From NCBI RefSeq assembly GCF_040938485.1, contig NW_027270975.1, positions 1,178,001-1,242,000 of the forward strand: DNA of 64,000 nucleotides, read 5' to 3'. Both the position numbers and the translations under genes were made by a program. Origin of the DNA: Diadema antillarum. Taxonomy: Eukaryota. The notes under the pieces were generated by a model. The model searched no databases and was not told where the DNA came from. It saw only the letters and a list, made by a program, of their open reading frames with translations. Shown here piece by piece: positions 37,371 to 64,000 of the stretch; positions within the stretch are counted from its first letter, which is position 1; every line of letters begins with the position of its first letter.

Positions 37371-37373
<3 letters not shown>

Positions 37374-37483: not shown

Positions 37484-37521
<38 letters not shown>

Positions 37522-39224: not shown

Positions 39225-39490
39225 AAACATGATGATGAGTTTAAGGAGAAGGAAGATGAAGAGGAAGAAGAAGAGGACAAGTTTTATAAGAAATGGATGA
39301 TGGTGGAGGTAATGATGATGGCGATGATAGTATTGATGATGGTGATAATGGAAGTGGTGGTGGTGTTGATGGTGGTGGTGATGGTAATGGTGGTATTGGT
39401 GGTATTGGTGAGGTTAGTGATATTTGGAGTGGTGGTAGTGATGCTGGTGATGGCGGTGGTGATGGAGGTATTGATGATGGTGCAAGAAGG
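39225..39490. repeat. Degenerate (GAT/GGT/GAA)n low-complexity tract
   Basis: Triplet repeats. They explain ORFs 39069-39566, 39284-39532 and 39293-39493. Confidence 0.85.
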
Positions 39491-39639
39491 TGAGAGTGGC
39501 ATTGATATCATAGTGATAAAAGATAAGTCCACTTCTTGCCATCATCAGTTCAGTCTTGTAATGTAGACCTACCTTGCTGTTCTCTTCATCATGCCAGTAT
39601 AAATCAAACTGAGAGATCTTGTATCACTTTAAAAAGGAC

Positions 39640-42062: not shown

Positions 42063-43694
42063 TTAAGAGAATAGCTGGAAACATTTGTTATTGTAAGCCT
42101 TTCCTTGACAGACTATTGAACAGCACTTCAGTTGCACAGAAGGAAGTAGGTGATGTTTCTCATTTTCTTACCAGTGATCTTACTAAAGATATTGGTTTGT
42201 ATAATTCTAATTCAATCAAATGTAAGCTATTTTTAAGGCAAACCTATTTTATTGATATCTTGCAAGTAGAGAGGTTTTTTTTTGGTCTTGTTTTGTCTTA
42301 TTTTGTTTTGTTTTGTTTTTTGCTTGGGAAATCTTCATTTAACTCAAAACTGTAGGTTCTCTTATAGCTGGAAACGACATTTACTGTCTGAATTTTAGAC
42401 TATTATTCACCCACAAATCTAAGGGTAAATGTCAGACCCCCTGATTACATAATCTGTGCCCTATCAGCTGCAGAATGTAGAATCTGAAGAGACTGTCTGC
42501 AGCCTTCCCCTACCCCCCCCCCCCCAATTCCCTCAAGGTTGTCAAGACCAGTGAAAACAAACAGATAATCCTCCCACATTTTATTGGATTGACCTCAGCT
42601 GACCTTATCCTGAGCAGGTAAAGTTCAGTGAACCACCTGAGATGCAGAAACAACAATCACTTCTCCCACACCCCATGCATGCTTTACACGGGAGCTTTCT
42701 TCAGGCTTTTCATGGTATATGGATGTAGGCCTACATCTTTGTAATTACACATCTAAAACACATTAACTATTCTTGGAGACTGCAAACCACAAACAACATG
42801 CCACACTATAACTGTGTCACAAATTGCATCACAAATTTGAAGATAAGAAAAGGTGTACATCTCTGCCAGTGAATGTATCTAGAAACATGCTTACGATATC
42901 ATCGAAGTCTTCATTAATACCATGGAGCTATGTAGCTCCGTGTTAACACCCAGCTACTTACATTTTCAACTTGTAGTGAGCTTCGTGATTATATATCCAT
43001 CTTCCTGTCACAGTAATGTGGCTATTGTGCCATTATAGCATGATAATGATATGTGAATATTATCTTCTTCTCCCATATTACCAGAAATTTGCTGCATGTC
43101 ATGAAGGTATCTGAATCAGCAATTTAGTGAAACTCTGTAGGCTAAAAATTATAAATATGCTTGATTTTCTCCCTTTTCCACTACAGAACTGTATTGAAAG
43201 ACAGGTCAAAGCACTTCTTTGAACAATAGTATAGTTTCACTAGCAGTGATCAGAAGAAAAATACTGGTATATAAAAGATTTCTAACAGTTGTTGTGGATC
43301 ATACCATTTTATCAAGAATTTGAGCTTAGTAATTCCAAGTTTCCTTGTGATGAAGTGCCTCTTGGCATGCTTGCTGCCTCAATATCTGGATTAGCCTCAT
43401 TCTTTAGGAATTTCATTATGATTAGTTGGATCATTCCTACAAAGAGGATTATATTGGAAAATTCGAATTGCACACTATGTGGTGCACCACTGTGATGTGT
43501 GTGTGTGTGTGTTTCTGTGTGTGCGAGTGTATGTGTGTTTAAAAAGCTTGTTACGGACAACATACAGTTGTATCCCTGGCTTGCTAGTAATAAACTCTTG
43601 CAGCCAGATATTGTGAGAGATTTAACAGTTCGTGGAACGTCAAACGAATGTCTCAAAGCTTTCAATCACAAATGAAAGTAGCTGATATCTTTAT

Positions 43695-43779
43695 CCCATT
43701 GAAGACTGGCTGATTTTGATACAGCACATATTTCCCATAGACACTTGCCTGAGTATACTTGGGACTCATCCTCAATGGG
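43695..43779 (-). mobile_element. 85-bp piggyBac-type micro-MITE, copy 3 (inverted)
   Basis: Reverse-complement match to 17654-17738. Flanks TTAT / TTAA. CpG sites converted to TpG/CpA. Confidence 0.85.
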
Positions 43780-44196
43780 TTAATTAACACTTATTGTATC
43801 TATGCAGGGTAAATGAATATTAGTTACCTGAATGATCAATATTGATGATCTTTGAAATTTATCAAAGAGGCATATCTGGTAGCATCAATTTGATAGCGTT
43901 TATGGAAGAATGAAAATGGCATGTACATGTATGATGTTTGTTGTTTTTACCCAGTATTCATCAAGAAATCATATCTCTATTTTCAGATAAACATCTTTTT
44001 TCAATTTTCAGCATATTGTTTCCTGATGAAATGGTGACATGTCTATTTGTTATGTAGTAGTTTAAATTCTCCTGTGCAAATGATCTGTAGTGAGTTGTCT
44101 AAAGGTTTCATCATGCATGCAGAATCACTTAAAATTATTGAGTGTGCATTGTACCATGTAGAGTAGAAAGCAATTAATTTGTTATTTATAGCTCAT

Positions 44197-44242
44197 GCAT
44201 ATATGACATTTATGCTAACGCATATATGACATTTATGCTAAC
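44197..44242. repeat. Perfect 23-bp tandem duplication
   Basis: gcatatatgacatttatgctaac x2. Confidence 0.95.
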
Positions 44243-44303
44243 ACATACTGAACATAGTGGTGTATGCCAGCCACATAGTAGATTTACATGTAAAGCAAAA
44301 ACT

Positions 44304-44535
44304 GTTACGTTCAGACAGTGATCCTTAACCTCAAGGATAAGTTCTATGGGGCACCAAGTGTCCCACGGTTGATTTCGTTATGAAATCAGTAATTGAATCA
44401 GTCATTTTATCAATCATTTCATCAAAGGAATGAGTAATTTCATAACAAAATTGACTGTGTGACACTTGGCACCCCATGGAACTTATCCTCGAGGTTAGCT
44501 GTCCTCAAGGTTAATGATCACCATCTGAACATAAC
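44304..44535. mobile_element. 232-bp fold-back MITE related to the 2167-2943 element
   Basis: Same termini (gttacgttcagac / tctgaacataac) and decayed taacctcgagg motifs. The ~85-bp arms form a near-complete hairpin. Confidence 0.8.
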
Positions 44536-46694
44536 AAGTGAATAACTAATGGATTTAGAAATTTGATTAATTCTGAAATGAATTACAAGCTTTCAGTTGT
44601 CCAGATATTTCTGTGGCTCAGGTTGGGAATAGTTGACCTGGATGGATTTCAGTTTACGGTCATTTCCAGAGGCAATATTTAACTCACTGCTTAGCAATCC
44701 TATCAAGGAGCTTCAATTACTCCACGTAGAGGTCAGCAATGATGAGACCAGAACACAGATCTATGATATGAAATGCCTTCTTTAATTTTGAACTCTCAAA
44801 CCACATTTTGTGTAAAATCATGTCAAACAACAACCACAGTGTTTTGTTTAATAAGATGAGATGCATTATGTGGATCACTGTGAGATATGTACAAATGTAA
44901 ACTGTCACCATATTACCTTATATAGATAAAGTCACAGACATTCAAATGGAGAAAACTATAAAATTATGTGATTAGCTGAAAATATGAGATAATAGATATC
45001 AGTTTGAAAAGCAAAAGGTATAGATATTTTGTACCCTTTGCCTAAATTTGAAAGTCAACGAGTGTTTTGAAATAGGAATTTTTTGTTTCTGAAGCAAGTT
45101 GACAGGTGTTTCACACAACCCAATGTGTTTGAATGTCTAATCTTTGATATCCATACTTGATGACATGCAAACTTTAGAGTTGATCTTCTGAACATTATGC
45201 TCAGGTAACGACTTTTTTATTCTTTCTGTAGAAATTTTTTTGGGATCAGGTAGGAAAAGTTCGCATCTTTGGAACTCTTGGAATCTTGGAAAATGTTATA
45301 GTACCAAAATAAGAAACTTGATATTCAGTGATCTCATGAGGTATTTCTTGCTCACAAATTTAAAGTCAAGGAATTTCCGTTTTATGTCTCGCTTACCATA
45401 CAGAAACATTTCGTGACATCTCAACAATCGAGATGTGTCATCCAAGTGCTGTCTTTGTTCCAGTTGCCTTTAAATATGGACAACATTTTAGGGCCAATGA
45501 ATCGTTCTCACAAAGAAGGGCTCCCCTTGTTATCTTTACATTGTGCTCTTTGTTCACATGGTTGCCTCACTTTATGGTGGGCAAAGTTTGCATTTTTATT
45601 TGTTACTCAAATGCAATGGTAAACAACATTAGATGATAAACAATAGAAGGCAATAAATCTTAGCGTGTTGTGTTCCCCTGATCCCTACCCATAATGTTTG
45701 TGATGATTTATAGGGCATGTCTGTGTGGATTTTAGATGCCAAGAAAACAGCAAGCTATTCATCATGTTCCTACTTTTGTGTAATTTCTCTTCAGGAATAT
45801 GTGGGTTTTCAAATAAATCTGCATGGAGAAGGATAGCATAGGTCCTATTACAGACGTTTGATAATCAAACCATATAGATATATATTTTGGTATATCTGTT
45901 AACAAATTATTTGATATGAATATTGTGTAGTCTTTCAAAGATTAGATGAGGGAAAAATACCAGTGATTTATCAGAAGAATCAAAAAGAAGTTCATCAAGT
46001 CGCTCAATACGAGCTCACAAACTGAGAATGTAGAGAGGACATGGCTTTGCCATACACTGCTAGTAGGAATGGAATGCTATGCATGTGTGCTAAACAGTTG
46101 TACAATTTCTGCATTACTAGGTCCCCCTAACGGTAATATCTGGAGTAGCTCTGTGAATTGCGACTGTTGCGACTTTCTCCCTCATTCTAAAAACGTGCAC
46201 TTGCAAACAACTTCCCTCTCTTGGGGTTGCCTAGGTTTCTTCTAATTGGAGCCTCGGATGGGAAGGGCTCTGAGAAAAGGAAAAAAAAAATCACCATGAG
46301 TCAGAAGTTTGGTAAATAGTCGTCTGTATTGATCGGATGAACAGCAGGCTGATCGTAGCCTTTAACAAGAAAGAAATAGGGAGGGGATTTCAAGCAAAAG
46401 GTGTGTAATGGATCTTGCGGAGTGAAAAGAAGTGGTGGAGAGGTGTTCAAACAGTGTCTGAAGGTAATAACTCTCGGTTGTAACGAGAATCAATTCATGA
46501 TTTATTGTTTATAAATGGTAAGAAAGATACATTTCAATACATGTATCACTGCACTGCTGGTTAAACACCAATAATTGATAGACTAACTTTGTTACAGGAA
46601 GAAAAGCTTGAAAACATGATAATTTACTTTCAACATGGAATTATTACCCAAAGTGAGAAAGCAAATACCAAGTTGATTACTCACTTGTATTTTA

Positions 46695-47095
46695 TGGGAA
46701 TGAAGCCAAAATATAAGTGTGTATTGAGTAAATGCAGAAATATAAGATGAAATACATCAGTGAAGTTTGAGGAAAATCAGATGATCTTTTTAAAAGTAAT
46801 TGATTTTTCAAAGTTTTAGTACGGTAGTTTTAGTACTTGATAAGAAGACTACCAAAATTTGTGATGCCACAGTTGGACAACAGTAAGAAGAAAAAAGAAA
46901 AATTTCAATAATTTTCATTTTTCCATCATAATGAATGAGCACTTGGCTCTTTCAGAAGGCAGGAGGAATAATATTATCCTCAACATATGTCAATAACAAA
47001 TGCAGGAAATGTGTACTTTTCATAAAAAAGTGAAATTTTGTAGGATTTTCTTTATATTTTCATTATATCTTTGTTCAACTGTAACATCACAAATC
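46695..47095. mobile_element. Degenerate partial copy of the Kolobok-type family at 35407
   Basis: Shares catcagtgaa(a)gtttgaggaaaat and gaaggcagg..gaataatatta...aaatgtgtacttt blocks with 35407-35975. Ends eroded. Confidence 0.55.
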
Positions 47096-48310
47096 GACTC
47101 TATGTGACAGGCAGAAAGGATGCAGATTTGTCATGTTTACGTGCCATGCTGAAAGACAGGACAACAAAGATGACTGCATATTTGACAGAAAGGGAGTGAT
47201 AAATGATGGTAATTTGACAAACATTCTGCACCTAGAGAATGCAGCTATCCAGAGCACCCTCAGAATGAACATCATGTGTATAGTATGGTATAGTAGCAAG
47301 AGGGGGTGAATGAATGAAATTGCTTTGAGTAGATCTAGTGTACCATGTAATGGTGGAAAGTACAATTTAAGTTTGTTTTAATTGTCTTGTATTTTTAATT
47401 TATCCTTTGAATTTAAAAATGGCATCTGAATACTATATTCTGTGAGAATGAGAAGCACACTGTAGGGGAAAATGATGTCACCATCTAGATAACAGACAGT
47501 GCCACACAGGTTGTAATTGTGAAGGGAAACTGGAGAAAAATTGAAAGCTTTGTACCCCACGCTGGTACTACATGCATCATGAATTTTTTTGCCATTTTTT
47601 TTTTTAAATCTCACAACACTTCAATGGAAAGAGAAGCAGAAGACACAAGGGAGGCAAAACCAAATTTGCATACTTAGCAAACAGGCTTTGGCAGTATCCT
47701 CAGTATGAAAACGGAGCTCAAACTATAAGTCTTTCCATTACCAATGTGATATAAGCTACAGAACATCATGCTTCATTTTGGAGTGTCCCCGGGGCTTTTG
47801 TGCACTTTTTCTTCCCTATCGAAATCTCAAAGTGGAGTAATAGTAAACGTGTATGCTTCTCAATCAGTGTGAGCACAATCTGCTCGTAGATGTATTAAGA
47901 TAAGCACATGAAATTGATACTATGAGAAGTATTCTGCAAAATATTTGCCCGGTGGTGGAAATAACCCCATCCCTATCAAGGCTTCGTGTGCGAAGCATTC
48001 AGCAAACGGATAATTACAATGTTTGCAGATGTGTTCACACAAATGCACACGCACACATATATGCAAGAGTTTTGTCAGTCTCACATCCCTGCTCACACTC
48101 CAAGCTTTTCCGTCTTGCTTGACCCACCTCCCAAAACCAGGCTTCTGGGCCATGCAATCATGCTCAGGGCCTCCAGTGTAATCACACATATACTCCTTTT
48201 GGCATGCCAGAGTTTCTCCCTATAGCTCTGACTTGTCAAGCATCTGAAAAATCATTTTGACAAGGGTAGCACCTTTTTGTCTCCTGACTATAAAGATTGA
48301 TCATAAATTA

Positions 48311-48534
48311 CTGTATATGCCATATATTTAGCGAGTCTAAATTTTTGCGAATCGGGACTTCCCAACGATTTCACGAGTGGGTAAATTCACGATCATGGAG
48401 TAATGTACTGTATGGAGAAATGTATACGTGTATATATCAGAGTCATTATTTTCGCGGTCTTTAATTTTGCGAATAGCACCTGACTTGCTAAATTCACAAA
48501 AATAAAAACCTTGCGAAATATTTGGCGTATACAG
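48311..48534. mobile_element. 224-bp Tc1/mariner-type MITE
   Basis: TA flanks at 48309-48310 and 48535-48536. 25-bp TIR with 4 mismatches (ctgtatatgccatatatttagcgag vs ctgtatacgccaaatatttcgcaag). Confidence 0.8.
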
Positions 48535-49409
48535 TAGTCGGCACCTTCCATATGCAGCACTTGATATCTTATCCCATTCTTGCTGAGAAAAAGTAACTTA
48601 CTACAGATATCATACATAGCATGTGATGACTTCTTTAAGTACTGGCTCAAGAGAATACCATGTCTATAAGTAATCTATTGCTGGGAGCCATGTTTCATTA
48701 AACTTCTAATCATTGATTATTATAGCAATCTAGTCTGAAATCTTTGATGTTTTTTTGAATGTGTTCTGATTTTGTCATACACAATATGAGATTATTTGAG
48801 TCTACCATAGCCTTGTAGGATAAGTATTATATTTTAGATAGTGGTGTTATAAAATAAGTGATAGGTTGCAATATAATCAATATCAAACACTGTGAGAATC
48901 TCATCGGCATTTGGCTGAATGAAGCCGTGACAATAATGTTGATACCCTGTGACTCATGGAAAAACATGCAAAAATATTTTAATGACTGGTATTAATTGTA
49001 TATGGGCATGATATATCTCTGTCTTAATGATGGATCATTTGCCTTTCCAGGGTGGTGTAGGTTGAAAACTGCACCTACCTTTGATATATGACTCACACAG
49101 TATTGTGAGTCAGAATAAAAGAAGTTTGTGATCTTGTGGATGGGTCACAAAAATGACTGAATATTTTTTCTTTTCATCCCACAACGAGGATTTTCTTAAT
49201 GACTATTCTTTAATATTACATTTAGGGGGTGGAATTATCAGTAAAATTGAAAACACTTAAGAGTGGAAAGAAGATTGAAAATGTCAGTCCCAATTCTTTG
49301 AGTTTATATGAATGTTGAATAGGTTTCCAGGTGTATACTAATGGGTACTTTTCTGGTTTAGATACTGCTGTATATCCCTCATCCAAATTGGTAAATTCAC
49401 TGAGCAAAT

Positions 49410-49656
49410 GAAGGGTTTGTGTGCAAAAACCGATTAGTCCATTTTTGAAGATTTTGAAGTATGATCTCTGTCATAAAGAACAAAATAATACCTTTTAAAT
49501 TATATATTGGTCACTACATATAAAGGTATATTGTTTAAGTTATGGTCAAAAGAAGCAAAAATTTTCTTATTATTCTCTTTATTTTTCTTGACCTTTAATC
49601 CCAAATATCTCCATTTGGCAAATATGGACTTATCGGTTTTTGCAAACAAACTCTTC
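49410..49656 (-). mobile_element. 247-bp Sola-like MITE, copy 2 (inverted relative to 8247)
   Basis: TSD AAAT at 49406-49409 and 49657-49660. Same TIR and internal sequence as 8247-8495 in the opposite orientation. Confidence 0.85.
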
Positions 49657-52370
49657 AAATCACCATTTCTAACAACATTGAAACCCTCTATTCACTGCTA
49701 ATACTATATACACTCTTTATTTAATGTGTTTTTTTTCTCTCATTTTTTTCTTTTGTGAATTTCAACCTAAATTCATGAAATCAGCAACTGGCATACCCAT
49801 TGTCTCCTGAAATACCAATGTACCATATTTTATCTTCAAAGTAGGAAATTCACTTACTTCTCTTTTGTTTCCCATTCCTTCCTTATTTTTCTCCATCACA
49901 AATAAAATCATTATTGCTTTGCATATCCTAATATCTAGATCTTCAGTGAAAGATATGAACTTGAAAAAGTATGTACTTTCTTTTCTTTTCTTTCTTTCTT
50001 TTTTTTTTTTTTTGGCTGAGTGTATGTTGACATCAATGAATGACCCTCCAGGAGATACTATGGAGGAATGCTGTGCTACAGATCATACATACACGGTCAT
50101 ATCTGTACCCATGAGAAACCAGTATGCTGCCCTCTGAGTTTAAAGACAATACAGTGTTAGCATCAGTCAGTAGGGAGGATGACACTCTTATCACTAGGTT
50201 TGTGCTTGTATGGGGGGGGGGGGGGGTGTATAGTGTTGTTGGTTAGGAGTCTAAAATGATGTTTTGGCTGTGCTTATCTATCAGTCTTTGTATTGGACTT
50301 TGACTGTCATGTGCTAATACATTTATTGGGTAATATGTTGATGGTGTGTGTTCAAAGTCTCATAATTGTATTAATGATGTGAAATGTATTGGATAAGTAT
50401 ATTGACAACAACATGTGCTATGTGCATGGTCGTAGAATACCTAGACTTCGAACACTAGCAGCCTATGATATCTTTGAAACTGGAAATTTTGGAAGTGTTC
50501 TTTTCTGTGTGTGTGTGTTATTAGGAAAGTAAGTTATCATCTTTTAATATCTATATCTTTATGATTGTTTTTTTGTGCATATTTTTGGTCTCTCGAGGTA
50601 ATTCACTCATTACTGATATACTATGGATGTCCGATTGTGTCATTGTCGACCTGAGGCTTGAGTGGAATATCACAAGTGCGTGTCCTGTAACTGTATGCAT
50701 TATGCATTAAGTCGTCTTCACAAAGTTGTACTTCAGCCTTTCTGTAAACTGTCTCTTACCACAAAACTCCTACTGAGCTAGTCTTTGTCAAGGCTCATAT
50801 GGGCCTTACTTCCCAGTTGTGAACACAATTCAAAGAGCTAAGCAGCCGACATAATGTGTTTGAATCTGACATCTTTTTTGTTGTTGATGAAGCAATATTG
50901 TTAGATAATTAAAGTTGGTAAAATGTTGTTTCAAATTCCATATTAGTGTCATTACATCATACAAAATGATTTGCTTGTGACAAAATTTAGATGTGAGTCA
51001 TTTTTTTGCTGCAAAAGTCTATGTAGGCCTATACTTGAATATAGAGTTAAAATTCAAAGATGAGCTAATTTATTTACTTCAAAAACTAACCCTGGATGCA
51101 ACTAGATCTGATGGACCAGCTTTACAAATAAAGATGACTAGAACTTGCTGAAGACCATGCATTTGCAAAACTTCGAATGGGGATAGTTATTTTTAGGATA
51201 GTTAATTTTGTGTATATGTTTCTAAGGGGATCATGTGTAGCAGTATTGTTAAGGGATAGCTATTAATCTATTTTGTCTAAACCTGCTTTAAATACAGCAT
51301 CTGTCTATCTCACTGAAACATTAATTTCTTAGTTCTAAACTTCAAGTACATGTTCAGTGTTTTCCACTATTTATACATTTTGGTCACTGCCAGATAATCA
51401 CACAATCAGCCGGCGCTCTGAATACTGCATAAAACAGCCTCCACAAACTCCTCTGACCCACACATGGAAATACAACACAGACAATGCTCTAAAACTTTTG
51501 TGTTACCTTGTTCCCTGTTTTTAGTTTAACAGAAGCTGTCAGACATAGTGTTATTTCCTATATTTAGATCATCAGGAGGCATGGTTCACCCTGATACAAT
51601 GAGGTTAGAGAAATAAACTGGTAGCTGTGCAGGAATTGTAAATATTCCTTGCCCCTAGTGAAACAAGCCATTCATTCCATTTCTTGCTGACCTAAATATA
51701 GCATTGACTTGGTGGCTGGGGGAGAGAGCATGACCATGACTGACTCTTCACTCTGTTGTGCATGAAAAGTTGCACATACTTTGATTGGACTCAGTTCTTT
51801 TTATTTGTCTCTGTTTGTCTCTCTCCTTACCTCTCTTTCTCTCTGAGAGCTTTCAGATTTTGAGCAGAAGAACTTGTTTGTAAACATGTTTAGAAACACA
51901 TTTTATACTAATCAACTCATATTAGTATGTCTGAAAGTAACTCAGAATCCCACTTGTCCCAACATGATTCACAAATTATATTCGGTCACTGGTTGTCAGG
52001 AGGAATGTTTTAATGTAGTTCTGTTGAAAGTACAATTGAAAAGATCATGACAAGCTTGATATTGTATTCACTTCCACCATAAGATGTGCATTTATGCATG
52101 CATACTACTTGCATTCAAGAGTATAGAGTTGCAAGGTGATGGAGTTTAGGGTATAGGTATAGGGTACAGCAGTCTGGCGGTTGTCATGGTGAGTCATTGA
52201 AATGTATGACCACTAGTTTTCACTCTGTTTACAATACACCCTTTGGGAAATGTGATAACAGATAGCTTCTTTGTTAAACTCTTAAATGCTTCTTTGTTTT
52301 TGTTTCTCTGTTTCCATCTGTTTGTATGTCTGTCTGTCTGTGCTTCCCTCCATTTCTTTCTCTCTCATAG

Positions 52371-52388
52371 GAGTGGAAGTTTGTTTTG
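52371..52388 (+). CDS. Candidate 18-nt microexon (EWKFVL if phase 0)
   Basis: Long pyrimidine tract ending ctctcatAG and donor TTG|GTATGT. Length is a multiple of 3. Lies 620 nt upstream of the basic exon at 53009. Confidence 0.25.
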
Positions 52389-53008
52389 GTATGTGCAGCT
52401 GGCAGGCTGGCTACTGGGGTGTGCAAGCACTCTCTTATCCTGTAGGCCCAGTCCCTGCTGTATGACATGAAGACATGCATCATAACAATTGAGTTATGTT
52501 TCACAGTCAGACATATCATTACATCCAGGCCCAGCTCATGTTGCTTGTATTTGTTCCTAGTCTTACCTTCAGGCCAGCTCCGGGGATGGACACATTGATG
52601 TGATGGTATTTGAAATGCCATAGGCATGTAAATAGGAAAAAGAATCTGGTGCATACTGAAGGGTATTCTTATTGTTGTTTAACTGGAAACATATCAGTAT
52701 TTTTCTCCTAGAAAGTGTACGATGTAGTACATGAGGTGAGATTAGTCTTGAGATGGTAGTCCTCTGTTTTCAGGGAATCAATTTTGTTGGTCTGTATTGG
52801 CCTTTTTATTTAGAAGGCAATCAGTAGCAAAGTCTTTTTCCGAAAATGTATTGAATCTAGTAGATTATGATTTCCATTTGTACGTAAACATCTTTGCGAA
52901 GAAGGGTGTGTATAAAGAGGTTGCTAAAATATGCTTTGTATTTGTATCTTTGTATGATTTGTATCTGGATTTGTATCATTCTTGTGCTAATTGTTTTTTT
53001 CATTTTAG

Positions 53009-53152
53009 GATCCAGAGAGAAAGAGAGCCAAACGTCAAAAAAGAAAACAGCAAAAAGCCAAACAAGTAAAAGCGAAACGCCAAAAAGAGAGAGCAAGTTC
53101 AGAAAGAAAAAGGAGACCAAGGAATAACAGGAAACAATCAAATAAGTTACCG
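53009..53152 (+). CDS. Coding exon A, Lys/Arg-rich: DPERKRAKRQKRKQQKAKQVKAKRQKERASSERKRRPRNNRKQSNKLP
   Basis: Branch-like gctaat + T tract + AG (53007-53008). 144 nt; only phase 0 is open across it. Donor CCG|GTGTGG. Paralogous to the exon at 55444. Confidence 0.7.
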
Positions 53153-54894
53153 GTGTGGCTTTCAAATCCACTTTCATTGCTTGGAGGTTTGGTTTTCTGC
53201 TGTGTGTTTGTATGGGGTTTTCTTTTGCCTGCAATCTGTTTTTCTGTTACCATACAAAGATAATCTTTCTTACCAATCTTTTCTTCACTTTGTTATGACA
53301 ATCAATGCACAGATGCCTATCACAATTCAGAATGCTTACAGAAGAAGACCCACATTTATCTCTTTGCCTTCAAGTAGGCTACATGATGGGGTCTTGTGTA
53401 AAGTCTATGTGGATGTCAGAATCTCAGAAAGAATACATTATGAATTAATCTGTTTCATCACAATTCTTTTTTTTTAAAGTCAGTTTTTCTTGTTTTGCAG
53501 TAATTTTGTTTGTGTCATTTTGGTTTCTCATTTTTATTTTTCATTGTTTGAGTTTGCCCTTTGGACATAGGGGTATTTGGATATTTGATCACATGCCCAG
53601 ACCAAATCACATTTGTGTAGGTTTTCTCATTTTTGTTATTTTTCATCTTCTTATTTGCTTTTCCTTTGAGATGTACTTATGTTTTTCTTTGCTATTTTCA
53701 TTCATTTCAACCATAATGAAAGATAGTCAAATGTCAAATTTATAAAACTTTTGGAAAAACATACAAAGAAATAATTCATGAAAAATGTTTCTACTGAAAT
53801 TAAATCTTATCCAGATAATTATATATGTATTTGTATGAAATACATAACGAACCATGCCTCTTTATTGTCTTACAGAAAGTCTGGCTTATGAATTTTGAAC
53901 ACTTTCCTGGTTTCCATGATTTTTTTTTGCATGTGTCATACAAATGCACTGTCTGAAGTGTTTGTTTATTCTTAATTATTCACTTTTGTAATAATTTGAC
54001 TTTAATAATATAAGAAAACAAGCTTCACAATTTCAGTTTGCACCCTTTAAGTTCCCTTTAGTTTGGTCCATTCAGCATAATATTTTGATCTCTTTTGGAA
54101 TGTCCAGAAGTTAAAAGCCAAAAGAAGCTGGCTGATGCAGAAGATAAGCCTGGAAGAGAGAAGCATATTCGAGGAAAATGAAAGTGCAGCTGCTGGTGGG
54201 CAAATACTGTTGATGAGACAAACGTTCAGAAATACCTGACAGTTTGAATGTCTGCAGATTGTAGCATTTCTTGGCATCTTGATGTCGCTGTCTTTGTTAT
54301 GTGACCTTGATAACACTCAGATGATTTCATGTGGACATGCCACTTCAGAAAGGATAACACTTCTCAATTTAAATCAGACACATCACAATTTAATTCTGCT
54401 TTTCAATCACTCTCATGTTTCATCATTTATGCGTTAAAATTCTTTTGTTTTGGAGTAATTTAAAAGTTCCTGATAAATATAGCTCTGTTTAGATACTGCC
54501 TTATATTGTGAAATATAAGATCTTAAGATATTCAAATATCTTTGACTAACATTAGTTGTTCAATTTTGCTCACATTTTTTCCAGTCTGTTGCTCTGATTT
54601 CACTTATGTTATTCAGGAACATATTTGTCTCTGCTGTAAATATTATTGCAAAGTACACATAGACCTACTGGAATGCCCCTATATATGTACACTATGTGTA
54701 CATGTACATGTGCATATCACCAACACGCTCACATACACAACTTCTTGAAGGGTAAACAACCCAACATGCATCTGTAGACTCAGTGAATCCAGCAGTAGCA
54801 GTGAATCTTGAGGAAATTTGTACTATCAGTTCAAAGTTATGAATTGTTGATATCTTAGTGCCACCGTTGCTAGAAAAGCAGGCTAATACAGTTT

Positions 54895-55250
54895 GTGATG
54901 TCATAGAAGTAGAAGATGTACAGAAAATATAAAGGAAATTCTACATATTTTCATTTTTCTAGCATAATGAAGGAGTATCAGACTTACCTCCTGCGGGAGG
55001 CATGAGGAATAATATTACCTTTAGCATAAATATGTCAGTAATAAGTTAAAGGAGGTTGTACTGTTCTTAAAAAATGAAATTTTGTAGACTTCTCTTTACA
55101 TCAATCCACTTCTGTGACATCACTCATTTTTCTAGCCTTCTTATCCATTGATGAGATGGCATGTGGTTTTAATCAATATATTAAATATGCATAGCTTCTG
55201 AACAGATTGTCCAATTTTCCTCCAATTTCACTGATGTATTCTCTGCATGA
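54895..55250. mobile_element. Degenerate internal fragment of the Kolobok-type family (35407)
   Basis: Collinear similarity to ~35570-35930 (ggaataatattacc..., attttcctc.aa.tttca.tgatgt). Confidence 0.5.
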
Positions 55251-55443
55251 ACAGAATCCACATACATGTTGGGGTACGTAAGTCTTGCTGTGTATTTTTC
55301 ATCTTATATTTTTTTTCTTCTTAATTTTTCTTCTTTATTTCATACTTTTTATGTTATTTTCACATTACAGTATGGTTGAATCTGTGTTTTGCTGCAGTGA
55401 TTAAATTCATGACATTTAGATTATTATTCTTTTTTTTATGTAG

Positions 55444-55542
55444 GAATCCCACAGGAAGAGAAATAATCAGCAAAAAGCAAAAGCAAGTGGTAAACGGAAA
55501 GCAAGTGCAACAAATGAAAGGAAATACCCAGACAATTTGCCG
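55444..55542 (+). CDS. Coding exon B, basic: ESHRKRNNQQKAKASGKRKASATNERKYPDNLP
   Basis: T-rich tract + AG (55442-55443). 99 nt, phase 0/0. Donor CCG|GTGGGG. Shares RKR, QQKAK, ERK..P and terminal LP with exon A. Confidence 0.68.
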
Positions 55543-56384
55543 GTGGGGATTTCAGTGTTTTCTTTCAGTCTTGATGAGATGTTGAGAGAGTTTTCTGCTT
55601 GGTTTGCCATTGTTTGCACATTTTATGCACCAAAGATTGATAACATGAGAACACAAGGCACTCAATGTGTTATGTATTTCTCAATTTATTTGTCTTATTT
55701 TACATTTATATTCTGGCTATGATTGCCAGGAGTTGCTGTCAACATATATGCAGAAAGCATCTAGTTTTCTTTTGGCAGAGTATTCACATTTCATCTTAAA
55801 AGATGTCATACATCAATTTTACCAGTGTCATACAACACTGGCACAGCCCATGGTACAATGAACCTGCAAAGATAAATAGAGAAAATGTTTGTAGTGTCTG
55901 AAAGTAGACTAGCTCCTCACATACCATTTGTCTACATCGGGCTGGTAGAAGGAATAAACAAGGGGGAAGGGAAAAAACTGTGACTTCACAACTCCAAACT
56001 CATTACAAGGCAAGCAAGCATGTACTCAGACATGACCAGGGGAGCATCGGTCTGTAAATGTGAAGAATTAACTCCACGTTTGACATCCGTGCGCGGCTCA
56101 GCGCTCCCGTGATCATGTTGCAATTACACGCCTTGATGCGCCAGTAGGGCTGCGGATTGTCAAATGTTTGGTTGTGTAAACGTACTGGTAACCTTTCTTT
56201 TTGTGTGTTGTTGTTGATCCGCAAGACACAAAGCCCCACGGATGGAAGTATTATAGAGCATTCTTTTCACTGATGCGAGCCTGGAAAGTTTGTTTGTGAG
56301 TTTGGTGTGCAACGGTATTCTTTCTTTTGGTGAGTTTCATTGTTTTTGACACTTTGTCCCAATCCTCTCTCATCCTTTTCACAG

Positions 56385-56393
56385 GGTGGCTGA
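56385..56393 (+). CDS. Candidate short terminal coding exon (Gly-Gly-stop) followed by 3'UTR-like sequence
   Basis: Strong acceptor ...cctctctcatccttttcacAG. Phase-0 reading GGT GGC TGA. Unverified. Confidence 0.25.
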   Translation, partial: GG

Positions 56394-59300
56394 ATCTCTA
56401 TCTCTGTTAGCTGTATATCTATTTCTTTCACTTTCAAAAGAATTTTATGACAGTTACTAGTTGTCATTATAGGTTTAGTATATATGGGCAGTCATAAAAA
56501 TGCTGTATGCAACTTGATGATTGTATTGCCTGCATATTTGTCACTGCAGAATTCAAGTGGTACGAATGATGATGGACTTGTGTTGAGCAAATTTACAAAT
56601 TTAGTGTCATTGCTGGTCAGTTGTATGTTTAGTACAGTGGAAGAAAGTATGTTTCTAGGCAATTTAAGGTTTAATCCGCTTGTTCAACTTTTTATTGAAC
56701 TGATCAAAGGAATATGATACAAATGCTAATCCCAAAGCAAACAGCAATCACATTTGTAAAGTTGAGTCAATCTCAAACTGCAAGTTACCCAAGCAGAGCC
56801 TGTAGAGAATGAAAGCTAAGCTAAGGCTATCCATTTAAACAAATTTTCAGTGCATTGGGTGCTTGTATTGTGGTATCATAGAATTTTGCTCCACTCACTC
56901 ATCTCACAAAACAAGGGATATATTCATACGTAGCTTCTTTTGAGGGTTTCTCATAGGTATGTTCTTTTACAATTAGAATTTAAGACTCATTCTCTATCTT
57001 TACTATGGTTCTGGCCACCAGTGTCCTTCCATGGTTTTCTTTTAAAGAAATATCCTTTCAGAAAATCAGAAATGTGTTAAGAAGTTGGAGAAACTGCAAG
57101 GAATCGCAAATAGTGTTTTAATGTCATACTTTGCTGGTGGTGCTGTCAAATTAACTACTTCATTGCTGTGTAGAATATTATTCTCAGCATGAGTGCGAGA
57201 AATTGGAGTAAAGCATAGATAACATTTATATTTTAGGGTCCTGTTTTTCATTACTTTAATTTCAGGGTTGTTATTTATATAGTGAAGTCATGGTAAGTCA
57301 ACTCGTGCATGTTTCTGCATCATGAAATGCCAGTAATCTGGAGACTTTTTAAACATTTTTATTTCATTGCAAGTATGCACTTTGAGATTAAAGTCTGCAC
57401 AAAAAGCATTTGATCTGTGCACTTTTCCAATGTCAATCTGAATTTGTTTGGATACACCCTCACCAGTTTTGGAACTCTGTTACAAGTACTCAGAGGTAGA
57501 TACACAAATCTAAAATAGTTAACATAAATTTGACTTTCCACTTAGAAGGCAGCCAGCCAGAGCAGAGACTAACATTGACTTTCCAGACTCTATCCACACC
57601 CACCAAATACTAACAATCCTACCTAGAGTGGTCCCAGACACTTTGACTGCCTCAACTTTGTCATCTTTTCACCTACCATCTCTTACCTGAAGAAGACTGG
57701 AGGCACTTGTGAGAATGTCTGCATCAGTTCAGTCTTTGATTAACCCCTCCAAGGACTAGATTGTCAAAATACTAATGATATTGTTTGCAAAGAGGTTGCC
57801 AGTGGTAATGACAGGGTTACATTCTGTATGGGAATGTTTGTTTCTTCACTTCAGAGAAATAAGTGCTGCTTGAGTGGTAACTATGCTTCCCTTTGTGAAG
57901 CTGGTATGACCAAGGAGGTACGCCTTGATATGACTGTTGAAGTACAAATTTTGCAGCATCCTTTTCTGGTGGTTTTACCACCCAGGGTTCAATTAATAAA
58001 GAGTATGAAAGGGTCCAGCACCATTCCTCATCTTGAGCACATAACCACTGGAATTATAAAGAATTGACGCTCAGCAGAAATGGTGCATGTCGATTGTGTG
58101 TGCTAAAAAGTGCAAGTCTTTTTTTCCAGTCTCATTCATTTTGAAAGCATAGCCAAGAAAAATGTATATCATGTGATGGCTTTACATCCATTGATTTAGA
58201 AATGTGCATGTTGATTATTTTGTTGGCACAATTCTTTAAAATAAGATACCATCATGAGATTTATAAGAGTCAAAGATACATTAGCATGTCATGGTTTGTT
58301 GAGATTTGATTTGATTTCTTTCAATTCAATTTATATTGTGTGAAGTGGACAGATTTCATTTCATTGTTTCAATCACACTTGACTTGATCTTAGATGGTGG
58401 CTTGTGATACAAATTGTTTTTGTTTGATTTTTTTCCCACTGGAAGTTGTCTGAGATCAACTGCTTCATTCTTTTTATTGTATCCCTATTTGTTTGTGTTT
58501 TTTTCAAGCAATTACATGTACTATTATTTTGTTGTGTAAATTTGAATTTAAGAGTGAAACATGAAAAAGAGGAAAAATCATGATTCTTCTTAATAATAAA
58601 AGTGTTTCAAGATTTAAGTCTCATTGTATATTTGGGCAGATGATGTTGACCATGTTCACTGATGGACAGCAATTGCAATTGTGCAGAACTTGACATTCCT
58701 TTGCAGTGTCAGTGGATGAGATACAGAATCACATTTCACACAGTTTTCCTCCTCAACCTCTCTGTGATGTGAAAGTGAAGATGGATGATCCCAGTTGGAT
58801 GTCAAAATGAGTTTTTGGATCTCTTAAAGGGAAACCTCATGTTCAAGTTATCTTAGATAAAAAGAATGGAATCAAACATGATAATGCAGAAAATTAAAAG
58901 TATTGTTAAAATTGGACATAGTGAAAGAGAGAGTTGAATTCCACAGTTTCGCATTTTTTTAAATTCCAGAACAATTGCACTACTATTCATATAAGTAATA
59001 TGAAATTATGAAGTCTTAGTTTCACAGATCTCCCATTTTTATACACACAAATCTTCAACAAATTTGTTTCACATGAATTCCATGCTGCATATAACATTGT
59101 CCTAGATTTGTAACAATTGAACAAAAATGACTTTGTTACATATTTTTTGAATAATTGGCATAGAGACTTATCTTGCAATTTTTTTTGTGTGTGTAGTAAC
59201 TAATGAGAGAGTAATAAAGCAATAGCATTATCACATTGTTTAATTGTTTAATACCACAGTATTTCAAAAACATGATAAAGTATAAAGTTTGTAATTTTCT

Positions 59301-60819
59301 TTAATAATACCTTTTTTTATGGGATGTTTACTCTTCAGTTTGTTTAACTTTTAATACTGATTTTACTAAATCACCTTGAATGAGGAGTACAATTTCCCTT
59401 TAAACAGAGAATTGAAGTTGTAATACAAGGGGCTCCACATTGGTTCTTATTTCCAGCTTTATGCAGGTAACTGTCCTACAACTGTATTAGCAAATGTATT
59501 CCTCTATATACAGAATGCTTTGGTAATGGATAATGCAAGAGTGGAAATGGTATTCAAATGGGGGATGGGGGTCAGGGAGGGTATTGTAAATGGTCTTGCT
59601 CTTAGCAATGTTGATGGTATGCTTTTCTTCTTTTTAGTGTGTATGCACAGACAGAGCAAAGTACAGACTTCATTTGTGATGGTACACAGCAGTTGAGAAA
59701 GTGCACGTTTTTGTTCATTGACTTAGACATATCTTAAGGGGCTGGCCTCTTTGAATTCCATCCTATTATCTCATTGCATCACATTGTCACCTGGAATGGA
59801 CCCCTTGCTGCTAAACGACCATCTCTTCAATGGAAGGGTCCATTCGAACAGGTCTTAGGCCTGGAGACAGAACCAACAGTGGACCTACAAAGAGTCCATA
59901 ACAATTATGTGATACTCCTAATGGCCACTTACCATGTCTGCGCAAACATCAGACTTACCAAATTAGGGGGTGGGGGTACAAGTTATATTCAAATGCTGGT
60001 GATAGTCTCATTTCTCAGACTTATGTCATTCATAATGCAATGTAATAAGATTAATTTTTCCCTCACCCTTCCTCATCCACATCAAATGTGTTTTACATAT
60101 GTGTATGATGTTGTGTTTTAGGCCTATATACTTTACACATACATGCATACATACATACATAGGCGTACATACATAATATCCATACACACATGCATATACA
60201 TGTGTATTGTATGTACATGTGCATACAGGAAGAAAGTTGTGTAGTTTATCAATACATGTATCTTAAAATCTAGGCACTTAGCATGTCCTATAGAATTGAA
60301 GGTCATGTGAAATCTCAAGCTATCATTCCGTCATTGTAATGAAAATAACTGATGTATCCTATACTTTCTAGCAGTTGTTAAAATGATCTTATGATTTTAT
60401 ATTGTGTGTTTTTTTTTGTATAGTTCAATTGAAGAAATTGTGATTTTGGGACAGTGTATGTGTTATGGTATTGATGATAGTGATAATGACAATAATAATG
60501 ATAAAAGGAGAAGAAACAAGAATCCCCCCTGTGTTCCCATCCTCTAGGCCATTGAGAAGTTATGTGGTCTATAGCAGGTGTTGATAAATTGTTTTGACAA
60601 AAGAAAGCATCCCTTTCAATATTTCTGATAGCAATTATTATTGTACAAAGAACAGGGCATGCACACTAAAATCAATCAAAGATTGTACTTCTACTAATTG
60701 TAAAATTCTACTAAGTACACAAAAATACTCATTAATCATTTACTTAATGTGAAATATTTAACATTCAATTGCTAACCCTGATGAACAAAGTTATGCACAT
60801 ATGTAGGCAAGATGGTTAA

Positions 60820-61201
60820 AGGGACTGTACAGTACTGGTTGAGGTGGGGATTCATGTTTTGAACATTGCTAAGTGAGATAATGAGAAACCTCTCATGAAA
60901 TATGAAAGAGCATGTAATTTTAAGAAGGATTCAATGTTTATTTGATGAAAATTGGTTTTCAAATGGCTGAGATATCCAAAAAGTGATAATAATAAAAGGC
61001 GACAGGCCACGCTTTTTATTAGGATCTCTTTGTTTCACCTTGTTTTTGGATATCTCAGCCATTTTCAAACCGATTTCATCAAATAAACTTTTGATACCCC
61101 CTAGAATTGCATGCTCTTTGACATCTCATAGAGTGGTTTCGAAATATCTCGCAAAACTTTAAAAGCTAAATCCTCACCTCAACCAGAACTGTACACACCC
61201 T
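60820..61201. mobile_element. 382-bp Kolobok-type fold-back MITE (second family)
   Basis: TTAA TSDs at 60816-60819 and 61202-61205 with AG termini. Imperfect arms (agggactgtacagtactggttgaggtgggg vs agggtgtgtacagttctggttgaggtgagg) extend >100 bp. Confidence 0.85.
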
Positions 61202-61722
61202 TTAAATGTTAACTTTTTATGAGATATCAATATTCCATTTTCATCAGACCTGGGGCAGTAATAACAAAGAGATCTGAAGAAAAACTGGAAGCATATGTTG
61301 AGTACAATATTACCACCAAGTTCCATACCGAATTTTAACGTTTCTTTTGAAATATATCTTGAAATTATAAATATTGAGAATCACTTCTTTGGTTTCCATT
61401 AACAAACTCTATGGAAGATCGTGTGTGGAGTATGAACGTCAAAGCCAGTGGAATGCTATGCATGCATTATTGTCGTGCTATAGAACCTACTTCATAAATT
61501 TGCCCAAATTGTTAAAAGATTACACATTTTGTATTTACGTCCCTGACTATTCTTTTATCATTTGCTAATAATTGACATTTTCAAAAAGAAACTCATAACC
61601 CATTTAGTTCAAGATCAGAACTGATGATTTCAAATGCATTGTGGATTATTTGTATTAGTAGTTGATTTATATGTTTGTTCTCTTATGACAATTGTAAAGT
61701 GCTTCAAAACATGTTTGTCCTA

Positions 61723-62009
61723 NNNNNNNNNNNNNNNNNNNNNNNNNNNNNNNNNNNNNNNNNNNNNNNNNNNNNNNNNNNNNNNNNNNNNNNNNNNNNN
61801 NNNNNNNNNNNNNNNNNNNNNNNNNNNNNNNNNNNNNNNNNNNNNNNNNNNNNNNNNNNNNNNNNNNNNNNNNNNNNNNNNNNNNNNNNNNNNNNNNNNN
61901 NNNNNNNNNNNNNNNNNNNNNNNNNNNNNNNNNNNNNNNNNNNNNNNNNNNNNNNNNNNNNNNNNNNNNNNNNNNNNNNNNNNNNNNNNNNNNNNNNNNN
62001 NNNNNNNNN
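61723..62009. other. Assembly gap (N run)
   Basis: 287 N. Confidence 1.
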
Positions 62010-62499
62010 GAATTGTAGCTGTTTCCAACTCCTGTTTGGTTGGCCAGTTGTGGCTGCTTTTTGACACCCAGCCATGCTGGTTTAGAAAGTGAAATACCCA
62101 TCATACATTGGCCAACTATTGCTGCTTCATACAGTATCATAATCCTGTGGAACTCTTGACGTGGTTTGAAGTTTACTGCCTGTAGCTCAGCAATCAAGGG
62201 GGCTGGGGTACAGTCTGGATCACTCAGTGTAGGAATGCCAGACAAGATTCGAACAGGCTCATCCATCGTCAATGCTCATATCTACCACTCAGAAGCGAAA
62301 AGCTATCCCCTATCACCCCACCCCCGTCACTAGAACTGTTACTTCCAGCTGGTTTTCATATGTCAGAGTTTACCTCACAGTGTATATTCTCTGCTCTGAA
62401 TTTTTTTTTACCCAGTAGTTTTTCTTTCTCAGTGGAAGAGAGTTGTTTTATTGCATGAACACCAACCCCCACCCCCCCCCCCCCCCAGTCCTCGTAGAC

Positions 62500-62768
62500 C
62501 TCACAATTGATTTGCTATGGTGTAGTTCAGTGGTGCAGTTCTCTGGTGCGGTTTGTGGCGAAAGATGCGCCAATGCCAGGCAGCTCTTTGGCGGGACGGA
62601 GGAGTAGAAATCAAAATTTATTGCTGTGGAGTGAACGAGGGATGAACCAGCCAGATACAGAGTTATCTCTCTGCCAACTGGAATGTTATTGTGTGCTGCG
62701 TGTGATACATTCTAGAGATACCTGGCCGTGTGTAATATTCATAAAGCTCTTTACAAGGAAATCTATGT
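62500..62768 (+). promoter_or_regulatory. CpG-retaining promoter / first-exon-like region
   Basis: Local CpG enrichment without TIRs. CCAAT at 62570-62574, E2F-like TTTGGCGG at 62587-62594, donor-like |GTGAGT at 62769. Confidence 0.3.
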
Positions 62769-62936
62769 GTGAGTTTATTGCATTCTCCCTGGAAAGGTGT
62801 GTCATCTCTAGTGACTTCCACAGAAAAGGAGCAAGCAGAAGTTGTATAGCCATATCACAACATTCTGAGTGAACATTTACTGGTCATTTGAATGATTTGA
62901 GAAATGGATACTGGTTCACTTCTTTTTGTTTTTCAG

Positions 62937-62961
62937 AAGTAGAAAATACTGTGAGAGGCAG
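62937..62961 (+). other. 25-nt exon with textbook splice sites (5'UTR or frame-changing microexon)
   Basis: Acceptor cacttctttttgtttttcAG and donor CAG|GTGAGT. Open as EVENTVRG (phase 1) or SRKYCERQ (phase 2). Confidence 0.5.
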
Positions 62962-64000
62962 GTGAGTTTATTGTAATGTCTGTGATTGTCATAAGATTGT
63001 TTCAATTGCTTGATAATTTAGCCAAGCCATTTTTCCATGAAAATTTTACAGATTTGGCATGTAACATGCAGATCCGTTCGTATGATCATGGTTTTCTCTT
63101 TCTCCTTTGATATGCCATCTGTAGATTTATGCTTTCAGCAGGAAAATGCCCATCATTAGGTCAAGATATGTGGATGGATTCCAGCTTTGAGCTGTTTTGT
63201 GATGATTACTTATGGGACCTCAAGGCCAAGATGTACATATTTTGCTCTGTCACAAGTAAATGTGAATATATATCCTGTAACAAAAATTGTAATGCATCTT
63301 CAAGTACTAGAAAGTGTAGAAATATCATTTGGGCAGTGCCTTGTTAAACCAGACACATTGTATGGATTAATATCAAAACAGGTAAAAAGAAACCCCCCTT
63401 AAACTAACAAGAGAAGAAGTCATGTGCAATTCTTTCACTGAAGTGCAGAATAATGGCAAAGTACCTGCTTGGCCTATTCATAGGCATTAGCTGGCTTTGT
63501 ATTGAATACTAGTTGTAGGCACATTAGAGGGGCTGTCATAGGTCACTGTCAAATTAGTATGACTGTGGGTAACAGGGAAAGAGAAAAACATGTGCTGCAG
63601 GTGGGTTGATGGTTACAGCAGAGAGTTATTAACATATGAGTGTGATACAGCTACACTGGAGTTTCAGTATATACCAAGGGAGAAAAATTAAGCACAGGAA
63701 TCAAAATGAATAAATGTTCCAATGAAAAGAAAACATACAGGATAAATAGAATATTGGTGAGATTATCAATCAGTTGAAGTGTTATATTTTAGATAATGAT
63801 CAGAAATAGTTATACTAAGTTTGTTCATTTTTATGAATCTTTCTTCAGTATGAAACTAGCTGGAATGTGATGTGTTCATTTGAATGAATTTGAGTCTTTT
63901 TTTTAGGCCTGAAAACCTTCTTTCCAAATGTGAATACAAAACAAATAATAAAAGCCCTGCATAATGTCTTCAAGTTCTTAATTTTCTTAGCCCATCACCT

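What the first reader, a model, noticed from the sequence alone, without database searches (positions are those of the whole stretch)
53009..55542. Tandemly duplicated Lys/Arg-rich exon pair: candidate mutually exclusive charge-switch cassette
Seen: two phase-0/0 exons 2.3 kb apart that the ORF track misses. A is 48 aa (23 K/R, net about +19) and B is 33 aa (10 K/R, net about +7). They align (DPERKR/ESHRKR, QQKAK/QQKAK, KRQKERASSERKRRP/KRKASATNERKYP, KLP/NLP) and share a weak donor context (ccg|gtgtggctttca vs ccg|gtggggatttca). Established: tandem duplicated exons with identical phases are the usual origin of mutually exclusive splicing, and alternative basic exons tune heparin/matrix retention (VEGF-A exon 6, PDGF-A exon 6) or nuclear import. 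Inference: the host protein swaps a strongly basic patch for a weaker one. The gene could not be identified.
Basis: partly seen in the sequence, partly recalled or inferred. Interest (0 to 1): 0.75.

Follow-up and report, generated by a model that had tools for sequence, protein, structure and literature searches.

The report
Sea-urchin tensin basic exon, intronic copy
The first lysine/arginine-rich piece is a real, already annotated coding exon of the sea urchin Diadema antillarum's tensin gene, and the second is an unannotated, diverged look-alike in the next intron whose use in any mRNA, let alone as an either/or switch, remains unshown.

Summary

Window 12668-12697 encodes residues 1-10 (exon 1). 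The C1 domain exon lies beyond the window.

Exon B (55444-55542) sits 2.3 kb into intron 2 and is in no annotated protein. A and B are the only two A-rich, T-poor islands in 64 kb. They resemble each other beyond composition, but only modestly (13 of 5000 protein shuffles and 31 of 2000 DNA shuffles reach the observed score), and 10 of the first 12 intron bases after the donor are identical. A diverged tandem copy is the likeliest origin.

Nothing shows that B is spliced. No RNA run was served, the codon differences show no purifying selection, and exon-like open AG..GT pieces are common here.

None of the enforcing mechanisms I could test applies: the intron between the exons is 2291 nt, the donors are U2-type, and both exons are multiples of three. 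No docking complement of the shared donor motif was found; other competing structures were not excluded.

The VEGF/PDGF matrix-retention analogy fails, because tensin is an intracellular adhesion adaptor. This is an ordinary candidate of a known kind.

The parts
12668..12697 (+). Coding part of tensin exon 1: ATG plus 9 codons (MGECYSLFSK), ending in phase 0 at a consensus donor AAG|GTAAGG
   Evidence: tblastn of P0001 residues 1-10 gives 100% identity. The sequence and an in-frame stop upstream of the ATG are seen. It has the strongest donor score of the exon scan (7.4) and lies in a GC-rich island at 11433-12748.
12698..53008 (+). Intron 1, 40311 nt, holding an antisense LINE at 20047-23153
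   Evidence: Coordinates follow; length; the LINE open frames are.
53009..53152 (+). Exon A = annotated exon 2 of tensin-1-like: 48 codons, phase 0/0, 23 K/R, net +19, 76% purine
   Evidence: It equals residues 11-58 of XP_071485521.1 at 100% identity, and the model continues with PQEAI from another exon.
53153..53164 (+). Donor and first 12 intron bases after A (GTGTGGCTTTCA), shared 10 of 12 with the bases after B
   Evidence: identity is 10/12 here, falling to 10/30 and then 14/60 further on.
53153..55443 (+). First 2291 nt of intron 2, between A and B
   Evidence: It holds a 41+32 nt inverted-repeat pair at 54873-55145.
55444..55542 (+). Piece B: unannotated exon-like diverged copy of the 3' two thirds of A; 33 codons, phase 0/0, 10 K/R, net +7, 71% purine
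   Evidence: It is absent from the only annotated product.
55543..55554 (+). Donor-like site and first 12 bases after B (GTGGGGATTTCA)
55543..64000 (+). Rest of intron 2 visible in the window; exon 3 (start of the C1 domain) is not in the window
   Evidence: tblastn of P0001 residues 59-123 finds nothing in the window. The gene range is 126 kb.

Best explanation
The locus is the 5' end of the Diadema antillarum tensin gene on the + strand. Exon 1 (12668-12697) encodes MGECYSLFSK. After a 40-kb intron, exon 2 (piece A, 53009-53152) adds a 48-residue, net +19, low-complexity and presumably disordered basic segment. This segment sits directly before the C1 zinc finger and the PTEN-like PTP-C2 module. 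Shown: A is in the annotated protein with these exact borders. Inferred: the segment acts as an electrostatic or nuclear-localisation patch; it contains three K-K/R-x-K/R motifs. Piece B is most likely a diverged tandem copy of the 3' part of exon 2 that landed in intron 2. It keeps a T-rich acceptor, a purine-rich body, a U2-type donor with G at -1 and +5, an open frame and 3n length. It is not part of the main mRNA. I put about 35-40% on B being spliced into some transcripts. If it is, it would most likely be as an independently included, frame-neutral cassette (1-A-B-3 or 1-B-3) rather than as an enforced either/or partner. Otherwise it is a relic whose T-poor composition has kept it free of stops.
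For: The exhaustive HMMER search with the A frame found a single hit, 98% identical over query residues 1-49. That hit is XP_071485521.1, tensin-1-like of Diadema antillarum. tblastn places residues 1-10 at 12668-12697 and residues 11-58 at 53009-53152, both at 100% identity. Pfam finds C1_1 (33.3 bits against a cutoff of 26.5) and PTEN_C2 (47 bits against 27.1). A and B are the only A-rich, T-poor islands in the window, are reciprocal best blastn hits, and have shuffle P of about 0.003 (protein) and 0.016 (DNA). Ten of the 12 intron bases after the donor are identical, then similarity drops to background. All exon combinations stay in frame without stops. B is absent from the annotation: the 90% cluster has one member, and a search with the N-terminal 120 residues returns only P0001.
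Against: No transcript evidence of any kind could be obtained for either piece; support for A rests on an NCBI model. The A-B similarity is only 64-68% over 75-84 nt in compositionally biased sequence (BLAST E 0.026). Codon differences are 2 synonymous against 14 non-synonymous, with mismatches of 9, 6 and 12 at codon positions 1, 2 and 3, so neither selection nor decay can be told apart. The annotation used only 12 RNA-seq runs from four tissues (PMC13511894), so absence of B from it is weak evidence. No orthologous locus could be examined: the L. variegatus locus L001 does not reach the N-terminal exons.
Confidence: 0.55

Rival explanations
1. One reading: A and B are mutually exclusive alternative exons, so tensin carries either a +19 or a +7 basic patch before its C1 domain.
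For: A and B share phase, both have 3n length, and both have intact splice signals. They differ by 45 nt, inside the 60-nt tolerance used to predict such exons in human (PMC5740500). In that study 654 verified mutually exclusive exons were ones newly predicted in introns, from 1,722 novel exons predicted. The donor-flanking 12 nt are conserved.
Against: No B-containing isoform is annotated. The 2291-nt spacing rules out steric hindrance, both donors are GT U2-type, and joint inclusion stays in frame, so decay of joint products cannot enforce exclusivity. No complement of the shared motif is present on either strand of the window. The inverted repeats nearby are short, AT-rich and numerous (45 pairs in 5 kb). 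PMC5740500 reports that all mutually exclusive exons with analysed protein structures lie inside folded domains, whereas cassette exons tend to lie in disordered regions. This is a low-complexity basic stretch, presumably disordered.
Confidence: 0.1
2. B is not related to A at all: it is a chance purine-rich low-complexity patch in a long AT-rich intron that happens to be flanked by AG and GT.
For: T-poor sequence is open in nearly all frames; B is open in two frames. About six phase-0, 3n exon-like pieces occur per 64 kb on this strand, three more of them in the visible part of intron 2. There is no period-3 signal. BLAST E is only 0.026. The shared 15-mer pattern was derived from the data, and 6 of 100 shuffles give two matches.
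Against: Only two such islands exist in 64 kb, and they lie 2.3 kb apart on the same strand, one of them a proven exon. Similarity exceeds composition-matched shuffles. The alignment is collinear and puts both borders in register, with 10 of 12 identical bases just past the donor.
Confidence: 0.25
3. A and B are alternative last exons that read through the 'donor' into a hydrophobic tail, giving a polybasic-plus-tail-anchor ending.
For: The A frame stays open to 53260 and encodes about 26 hydrophobic residues and then a stop. The B frame stays open to 55719.
Against: The annotated protein leaves A exactly at 53152 and goes on into the C1 domain. The stretch after A is T-rich and A-poor, which yields hydrophobic codons by composition alone. 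The B tail has charged residues in it. Pfam matches are all below cutoff. No protein of 46-147 residues shares words with the 84-residue frame.
Confidence: 0.03

Closest known systems
Unannotated tandem exon duplicates found in introns next to their parent exon (Hatje et al. 2017, PMC5740500; Ivanov and Pervouchine 2022, PMC9013439)
   Same: An annotated coding exon has a weaker look-alike in the adjacent intron, with the same frame, similar length and GT-AG borders. This is exactly the kind of candidate those surveys predict by similarity and then test with junction reads.
   Different: Similarity here is low (44% of residues, 64-68% of bases) and sits in low-complexity sequence. [quoted passage not shown] No junction reads are available.
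Vertebrate tensin-2 (TNS2, C1-TEN): C1 domain next to a PTP-C2 module
   Same: The order C1, then PTEN-like phosphatase, then C2 is seen in the urchin protein, with SH2 and PTB further on in the L. variegatus neighbour model.
   Different: The urchin protein has a 48-residue +19 exon before the C1 domain that has no detectable relative in 1.84 billion representative proteins. I did not compare it with the human N-terminus using a tool.
PTEN N-terminal polybasic PIP2-binding motif (from my own knowledge, not tested here)
   Same: A basic cluster lies N-terminal to a PTEN-type phosphatase-C2 module, which suggests binding to acidic membranes or nuclear shuttling.
   Different: The urchin patch is much longer. 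It is separated from the PTP domain by the C1 domain and by roughly 135-150 residues rich in Ser, Pro and Gln. Any lipid binding is untested.
   Same: A short, optional Lys/Arg-rich exon.
   Different: Those act outside the cell on heparan sulphate. The host here is a cytoplasmic adhesion adaptor whose N-terminal exons show no obvious signal peptide by eye, and no cystine-knot domain is found by Pfam.

Membership tests
Tensin family (host gene) | PTEN-like phosphatase domain followed by a PTEN-type C2 domain | tested here: met
   PTEN_C2 scores 47 bits against a cutoff of 27.1. Residues 255-500 are 86% identical to L. variegatus tensin-3-like, and about 42-57% identical to the other listed homologs, most of them named tensin. 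The phosphatase Pfam match alone is below cutoff (20.2 against 27).
Tensin family (host gene) | C-terminal SH2 and PTB domains | tested here: inconclusive
These are not in the 500-residue model. The next model, 0.9 kb downstream, has 1833 residues with no Pfam hit on record. The equivalent 1952-residue L. variegatus model carries SH2 and PTB.
Tensin family (host gene) | C1 domain before the PTP domain (TNS2-type architecture) | tested here: met
   C1_1 scores 33.3 bits against a cutoff of 26.5, at residues 68-114.
Mutually exclusive exon pair from tandem duplication | Neighbouring exons of one gene with sequence similarity, the same frame and similar length | tested here: inconclusive
   Frame and phase are the same, and the lengths are 144 and 99 nt. 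Similarity is modest: shuffle P is 0.003 for protein and 0.016 for DNA. B is not an annotated exon.
Mutually exclusive exon pair from tandem duplication | Junction reads from each exon to both flanking exons, and none joining the two | not testable with these tools
Mutually exclusive exon pair from tandem duplication | A mechanism that forbids joint inclusion (steric hindrance, U2/U12 incompatibility, frame shift with decay, or competing RNA structures) | tested here: not met
   The intron is 2291 nt, the donors are GTGTGG and GTGGGG, and both exons are 3n with no stop at any junction. There is no complement of the shared motif. Other competing structures are not excluded.
Heparin-binding alternative exon of PDGF/VEGF-type growth factors | The host is a secreted cystine-knot growth factor | tested here: not met
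   The host protein is tensin-1-like, with C1 and PTEN_C2 domains.
N-myristoyl plus polybasic membrane switch (Src or MARCKS type) | An N-terminal Met-Gly that fits the N-myristoylation rule, next to a basic cluster | tested here: not met
   MGECYS has Glu after Gly, which the PROSITE-style pattern G-{EDRKHPFYW}-x(2)-[STAGCN]-{P} excludes. The pattern was recalled from memory. The basic cluster itself is present.

The most novel reading that the evidence does not exclude
B is a regulated alternative exon, used in tissues or stages not sampled for the annotation. It replaces or extends exon 2, so that sea-urchin tensin is made with a +19, +7 or +26 basic patch immediately before its C1 domain. 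This would tune nuclear entry or binding to acidic membranes at adhesions. The 12 conserved bases after each donor would be a shared splicing-control element.
Probability: 0.12. Interest if true: 0.5.

Novelty: new member of a known kind. Interest (0 to 1): 0.3.

Why it matters
What is left is a testable candidate for an unannotated alternative exon in an echinoderm tensin. If B is used, it would give a simple natural series of charge variants next to a C1 domain whose function in tensins is still called unclear (PMC12383349). If it is not used, it is one more example of how purine-rich exon duplicates can stay exon-like in introns for a long time without being exons. That is a caution for sequence-only exon calls in AT-rich genomes.

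Tried and rejected
- **RNA evidence.** The look-up of sequencing runs (kind rna) listed no run and used its only call, so read laying could not be used.
- **Tail-anchor reading.** I considered that both frames read through into a hydrophobic tail. I rejected it once the annotated protein was seen to splice at 53152.
- **Family scan.** Pfam on the A and B read-through frames and eight other open stretches gave nothing above cutoff; two searches were coordinate slips of mine.
- **Word search.** The 84-residue A frame found no candidate.
- **Period-3 signal.** It was at background for A and B, and flagged only triplet repeats and the LINE.
- **GC peaks and splice-site exon scan.** Besides A and B they found exon 1 but no further convincing exon.
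- **Orthologues.** The N-terminal 120 residues found only the query. The PTP-C2 region found L. variegatus tensin-3-like, whose model starts after the C1 domain. Its locus L001 (10 kb of upstream flank) holds no exon 1, A-like or C1 exon and no comparable A-rich island upstream. Full-length urchin tensins are too long for the word search's length window.
- **Docking or selector search.** The shared 15-mer has no antisense match, and the local inverted repeats look like chance AT-rich pairs.
- **Exon-like piece at 54108-54236.** This piece between A and B has a weak acceptor (88th percentile) and no family match; I dropped it.
- **Myristoyl switch.** The Met-Gly start fails the sequence rule.

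Full report
**What is in the sequence**

Piece A (53009-53152) has 48 codons, 23 K/R and net +19. Piece B (55444-55542) has 33 codons, 10 K/R and net +7.

Each piece begins right after a TAG that is both an in-frame stop and the AG of an acceptor behind a T-rich tract. Each ends at CCG|GTG.GG. On a crude metazoan splice matrix, with weights I recalled from memory, the sites rank as follows:

| Site | Percentile in the window |
|---|---|
| A donor | 99.3rd of all GT |
| B donor | 99.7th of all GT |
| A acceptor | 94.9th of all AG |
| B acceptor | 98.9th of all AG |

A is 55% A and 7% T; B is 48% A and 11% T. They are the only two 99-nt stretches on the + strand of the 64-kb window with at least 45% A and at most 12% T. 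The island edges fall on the claimed borders.

**How much of this is chance**

T-poor sequence seldom forms stop codons. Around A all three frames are almost open, and B is open in two frames, so openness says little.

An exon scan with the same splice thresholds returned 27 candidate intervals on the + strand. About six of them are phase-0 and 3n, and three more of those lie in the visible part of intron 2. Neither piece shows a period-3 signal.

The A-B resemblance does go beyond composition, but only modestly:
- B is A's best non-self blastn hit and vice versa (84 bp, 68%, E 0.026).
- The peptide local score of 53 is reached by 13 of 5000 shuffles of B.
- The DNA score is reached by 31 of 2000 block-wise shuffles.

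The alignment is collinear and puts both donors in register. Ten of the first 12 intron bases are identical, after which identity falls to 10/30 and 14/60.

**Identity of the gene**

I used the exhaustive profile search only after the family scan and the word search had left the piece open. It gave one hit in 1.84 billion representatives: P0001, 98% identical over query residues 1-49.

tblastn against the window gave these placements:
- Residues 1-10 (MGECYSLFSK) lie at 12668-12697, at 100% identity.
- Residues 11-58 lie at 53009-53152, at 100% identity.
- Residue 59 onward (PQEAIDPQSHTFK..., the C1 domain) is not in the window.

Exon 1 has an ATG with G at -3 and +4, an in-frame stop upstream, and a consensus donor AAG|GTAAGG. 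Pfam finds C1_1 and PTEN_C2 above their cutoffs.

The gene call spans 126 kb, and an 1833-residue model follows 0.9 kb downstream. In Lytechinus variegatus the same split is seen, and there the downstream model carries SH2 and PTB.

So A is exon 2 of a C1-PTP-C2 tensin. It follows a 40311-nt intron 1, and B lies 2291 nt into intron 2.

**What this does to the early alternatives**

Both frames read on past the donor into hydrophobic codons, which at first suggested alternative tail-anchor endings. The annotated protein leaves A exactly at 53152, and the stretch after A is simply T-rich. I reject that reading.

**Status of B**

B is in no annotated product. P0001's 90% cluster has a single member. 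A search with its first 120 residues, which would catch any 275-875-residue isoform sharing exon 1 and the C1 domain, returned only P0001.

This absence is weak evidence. [quoted passage not shown] No RNA run was served to me, so no read could be laid on the region.

Between A and B, 14 of 16 differing codons change the residue. Mismatches at codon positions 1, 2 and 3 are 9, 6 and 12. That fits relaxed constraint on a low-complexity basic segment as well as it fits neutral decay.

No orthologous intron could be examined. The only urchin relative within the word search's length window starts after the C1 domain, and its locus does not reach the N-terminal exons. The A exon itself has no detectable relative outside D. 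antillarum. It is therefore either young or fast-evolving.

**Mutual exclusivity**

All combinations 1-A-3, 1-B-3 and 1-A-B-3 stay in frame with no stop. Testing the known enforcing mechanisms gave:
- Steric hindrance is excluded by the 2291-nt spacing.
- Both donors are GT U2-type.
- Joint inclusion does not shift the frame.
- The shared 15-mer has no antisense partner in the window.
- The local inverted repeats are short, AT-rich and numerous.

Hatje et al. report that all mutually exclusive exons with analysed protein structures lie in folded domains, while cassette exons favour disordered regions (PMC5740500). A and B encode a low-complexity basic stretch that I take to be disordered; I ran no disorder or structure prediction. 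If B is used, an independent cassette is the more natural mode.

In favour of some use:
- Purine-rich bodies are classic splicing enhancers (my own knowledge).
- B keeps good splice sites.
- In human, 654 of the verified mutually exclusive exons were ones newly predicted in introns, from 1,722 novel exons predicted.

**Likely function of the basic segment**

Tensin is an intracellular adhesion adaptor, so the VEGF/PDGF matrix-retention analogy does not apply. A carries three K-K/R-x-K/R motifs and one bipartite-type match. By eye, B reads KR, ten residues, then KRKAS, which also fits the bipartite rule; my script's greedy pattern missed it.

Nuclear import, or electrostatic binding to acidic membranes next to the C1 domain, are the plausible roles; both are inferred. 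A myristoyl-electrostatic switch is unlikely, because Glu follows the N-terminal Gly.

**Verdict**

- A is an already annotated exon (about 95% sure).
- A-B homology by tandem duplication is likely (about 70%).
- Any splicing of B is open (35-40%).
- Strict mutual exclusivity is unlikely (about 10%).

This is a routine candidate of a known kind. It can be settled by mapping existing RNA-seq or by one RT-PCR.

Noticed in passing
window 20047-23153, minus strand: A non-LTR retrotransposon (LINE) with long open frames for an endonuclease-like and a reverse-transcriptase-like protein (300, 378 and 374 residues, adjacent). It lies antisense inside tensin intron 1. I named it from the look of the translation only.
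   Followed up: no
beyond the window (gene call); L001:10001-42501: In both D. antillarum (500 + 1833 residues, 0.9 kb apart) and L. variegatus (497 + 1952 residues, 35 nt apart) the tensin locus is annotated as two adjacent genes. The split falls in or just after the C2 domain: the D. antillarum model stops inside it, the L. variegatus one about 95 residues further on. The D. antillarum model ends in STTITCV where L. variegatus continues the C2 domain. This looks like a split or truncated model rather than two genes.
   Followed up: partly
P0001 residues 68-114; P0003 and P0023: A sea-urchin, a scorpion and a mirid-bug tensin model all carry a C1 domain before the PTP-C2 module. This sits badly with a recent review's statement that the C1 domain of TNS2 is a late, lineage-specific acquisition (PMC12383349).
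   Followed up: partly
window 54873-55145: Two nested inverted-repeat pairs (41 nt at 76% and 32 nt at 81% complementary) form a roughly 270-nt hairpin-like element between A and B. It may be a small foldback transposon.
   Followed up: no
window 39151-39550 and 14041-14290: These are the strongest period-3 signals in the window (24.9 and 9.6 times background). They come from triplet-type low-complexity repeats that are open in several frames (His-, Val/Met- and Pro/Ser-rich translations), not from recognisable genes.
   Followed up: no
window 54108-54236: An exon-like open piece (KLKAKRSW...RNT, then a stop) lies between A and B, behind a weak acceptor (88th percentile). It has no family match.
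   Followed up: partly
window 29223-29350 and 61723-62009: There are two runs of N (128 and 287 bases). The genome paper describes this assembly as free of gaps, so these are presumably masked on purpose.
   Followed up: no
window 11433-12748: A GC-rich island (up to 61% GC against a 36.5% window mean) with a C18 run and a CA repeat at about 11820-11850 lies just upstream of the tensin start codon. It is probably the promoter and 5' UTR.
   Followed up: no
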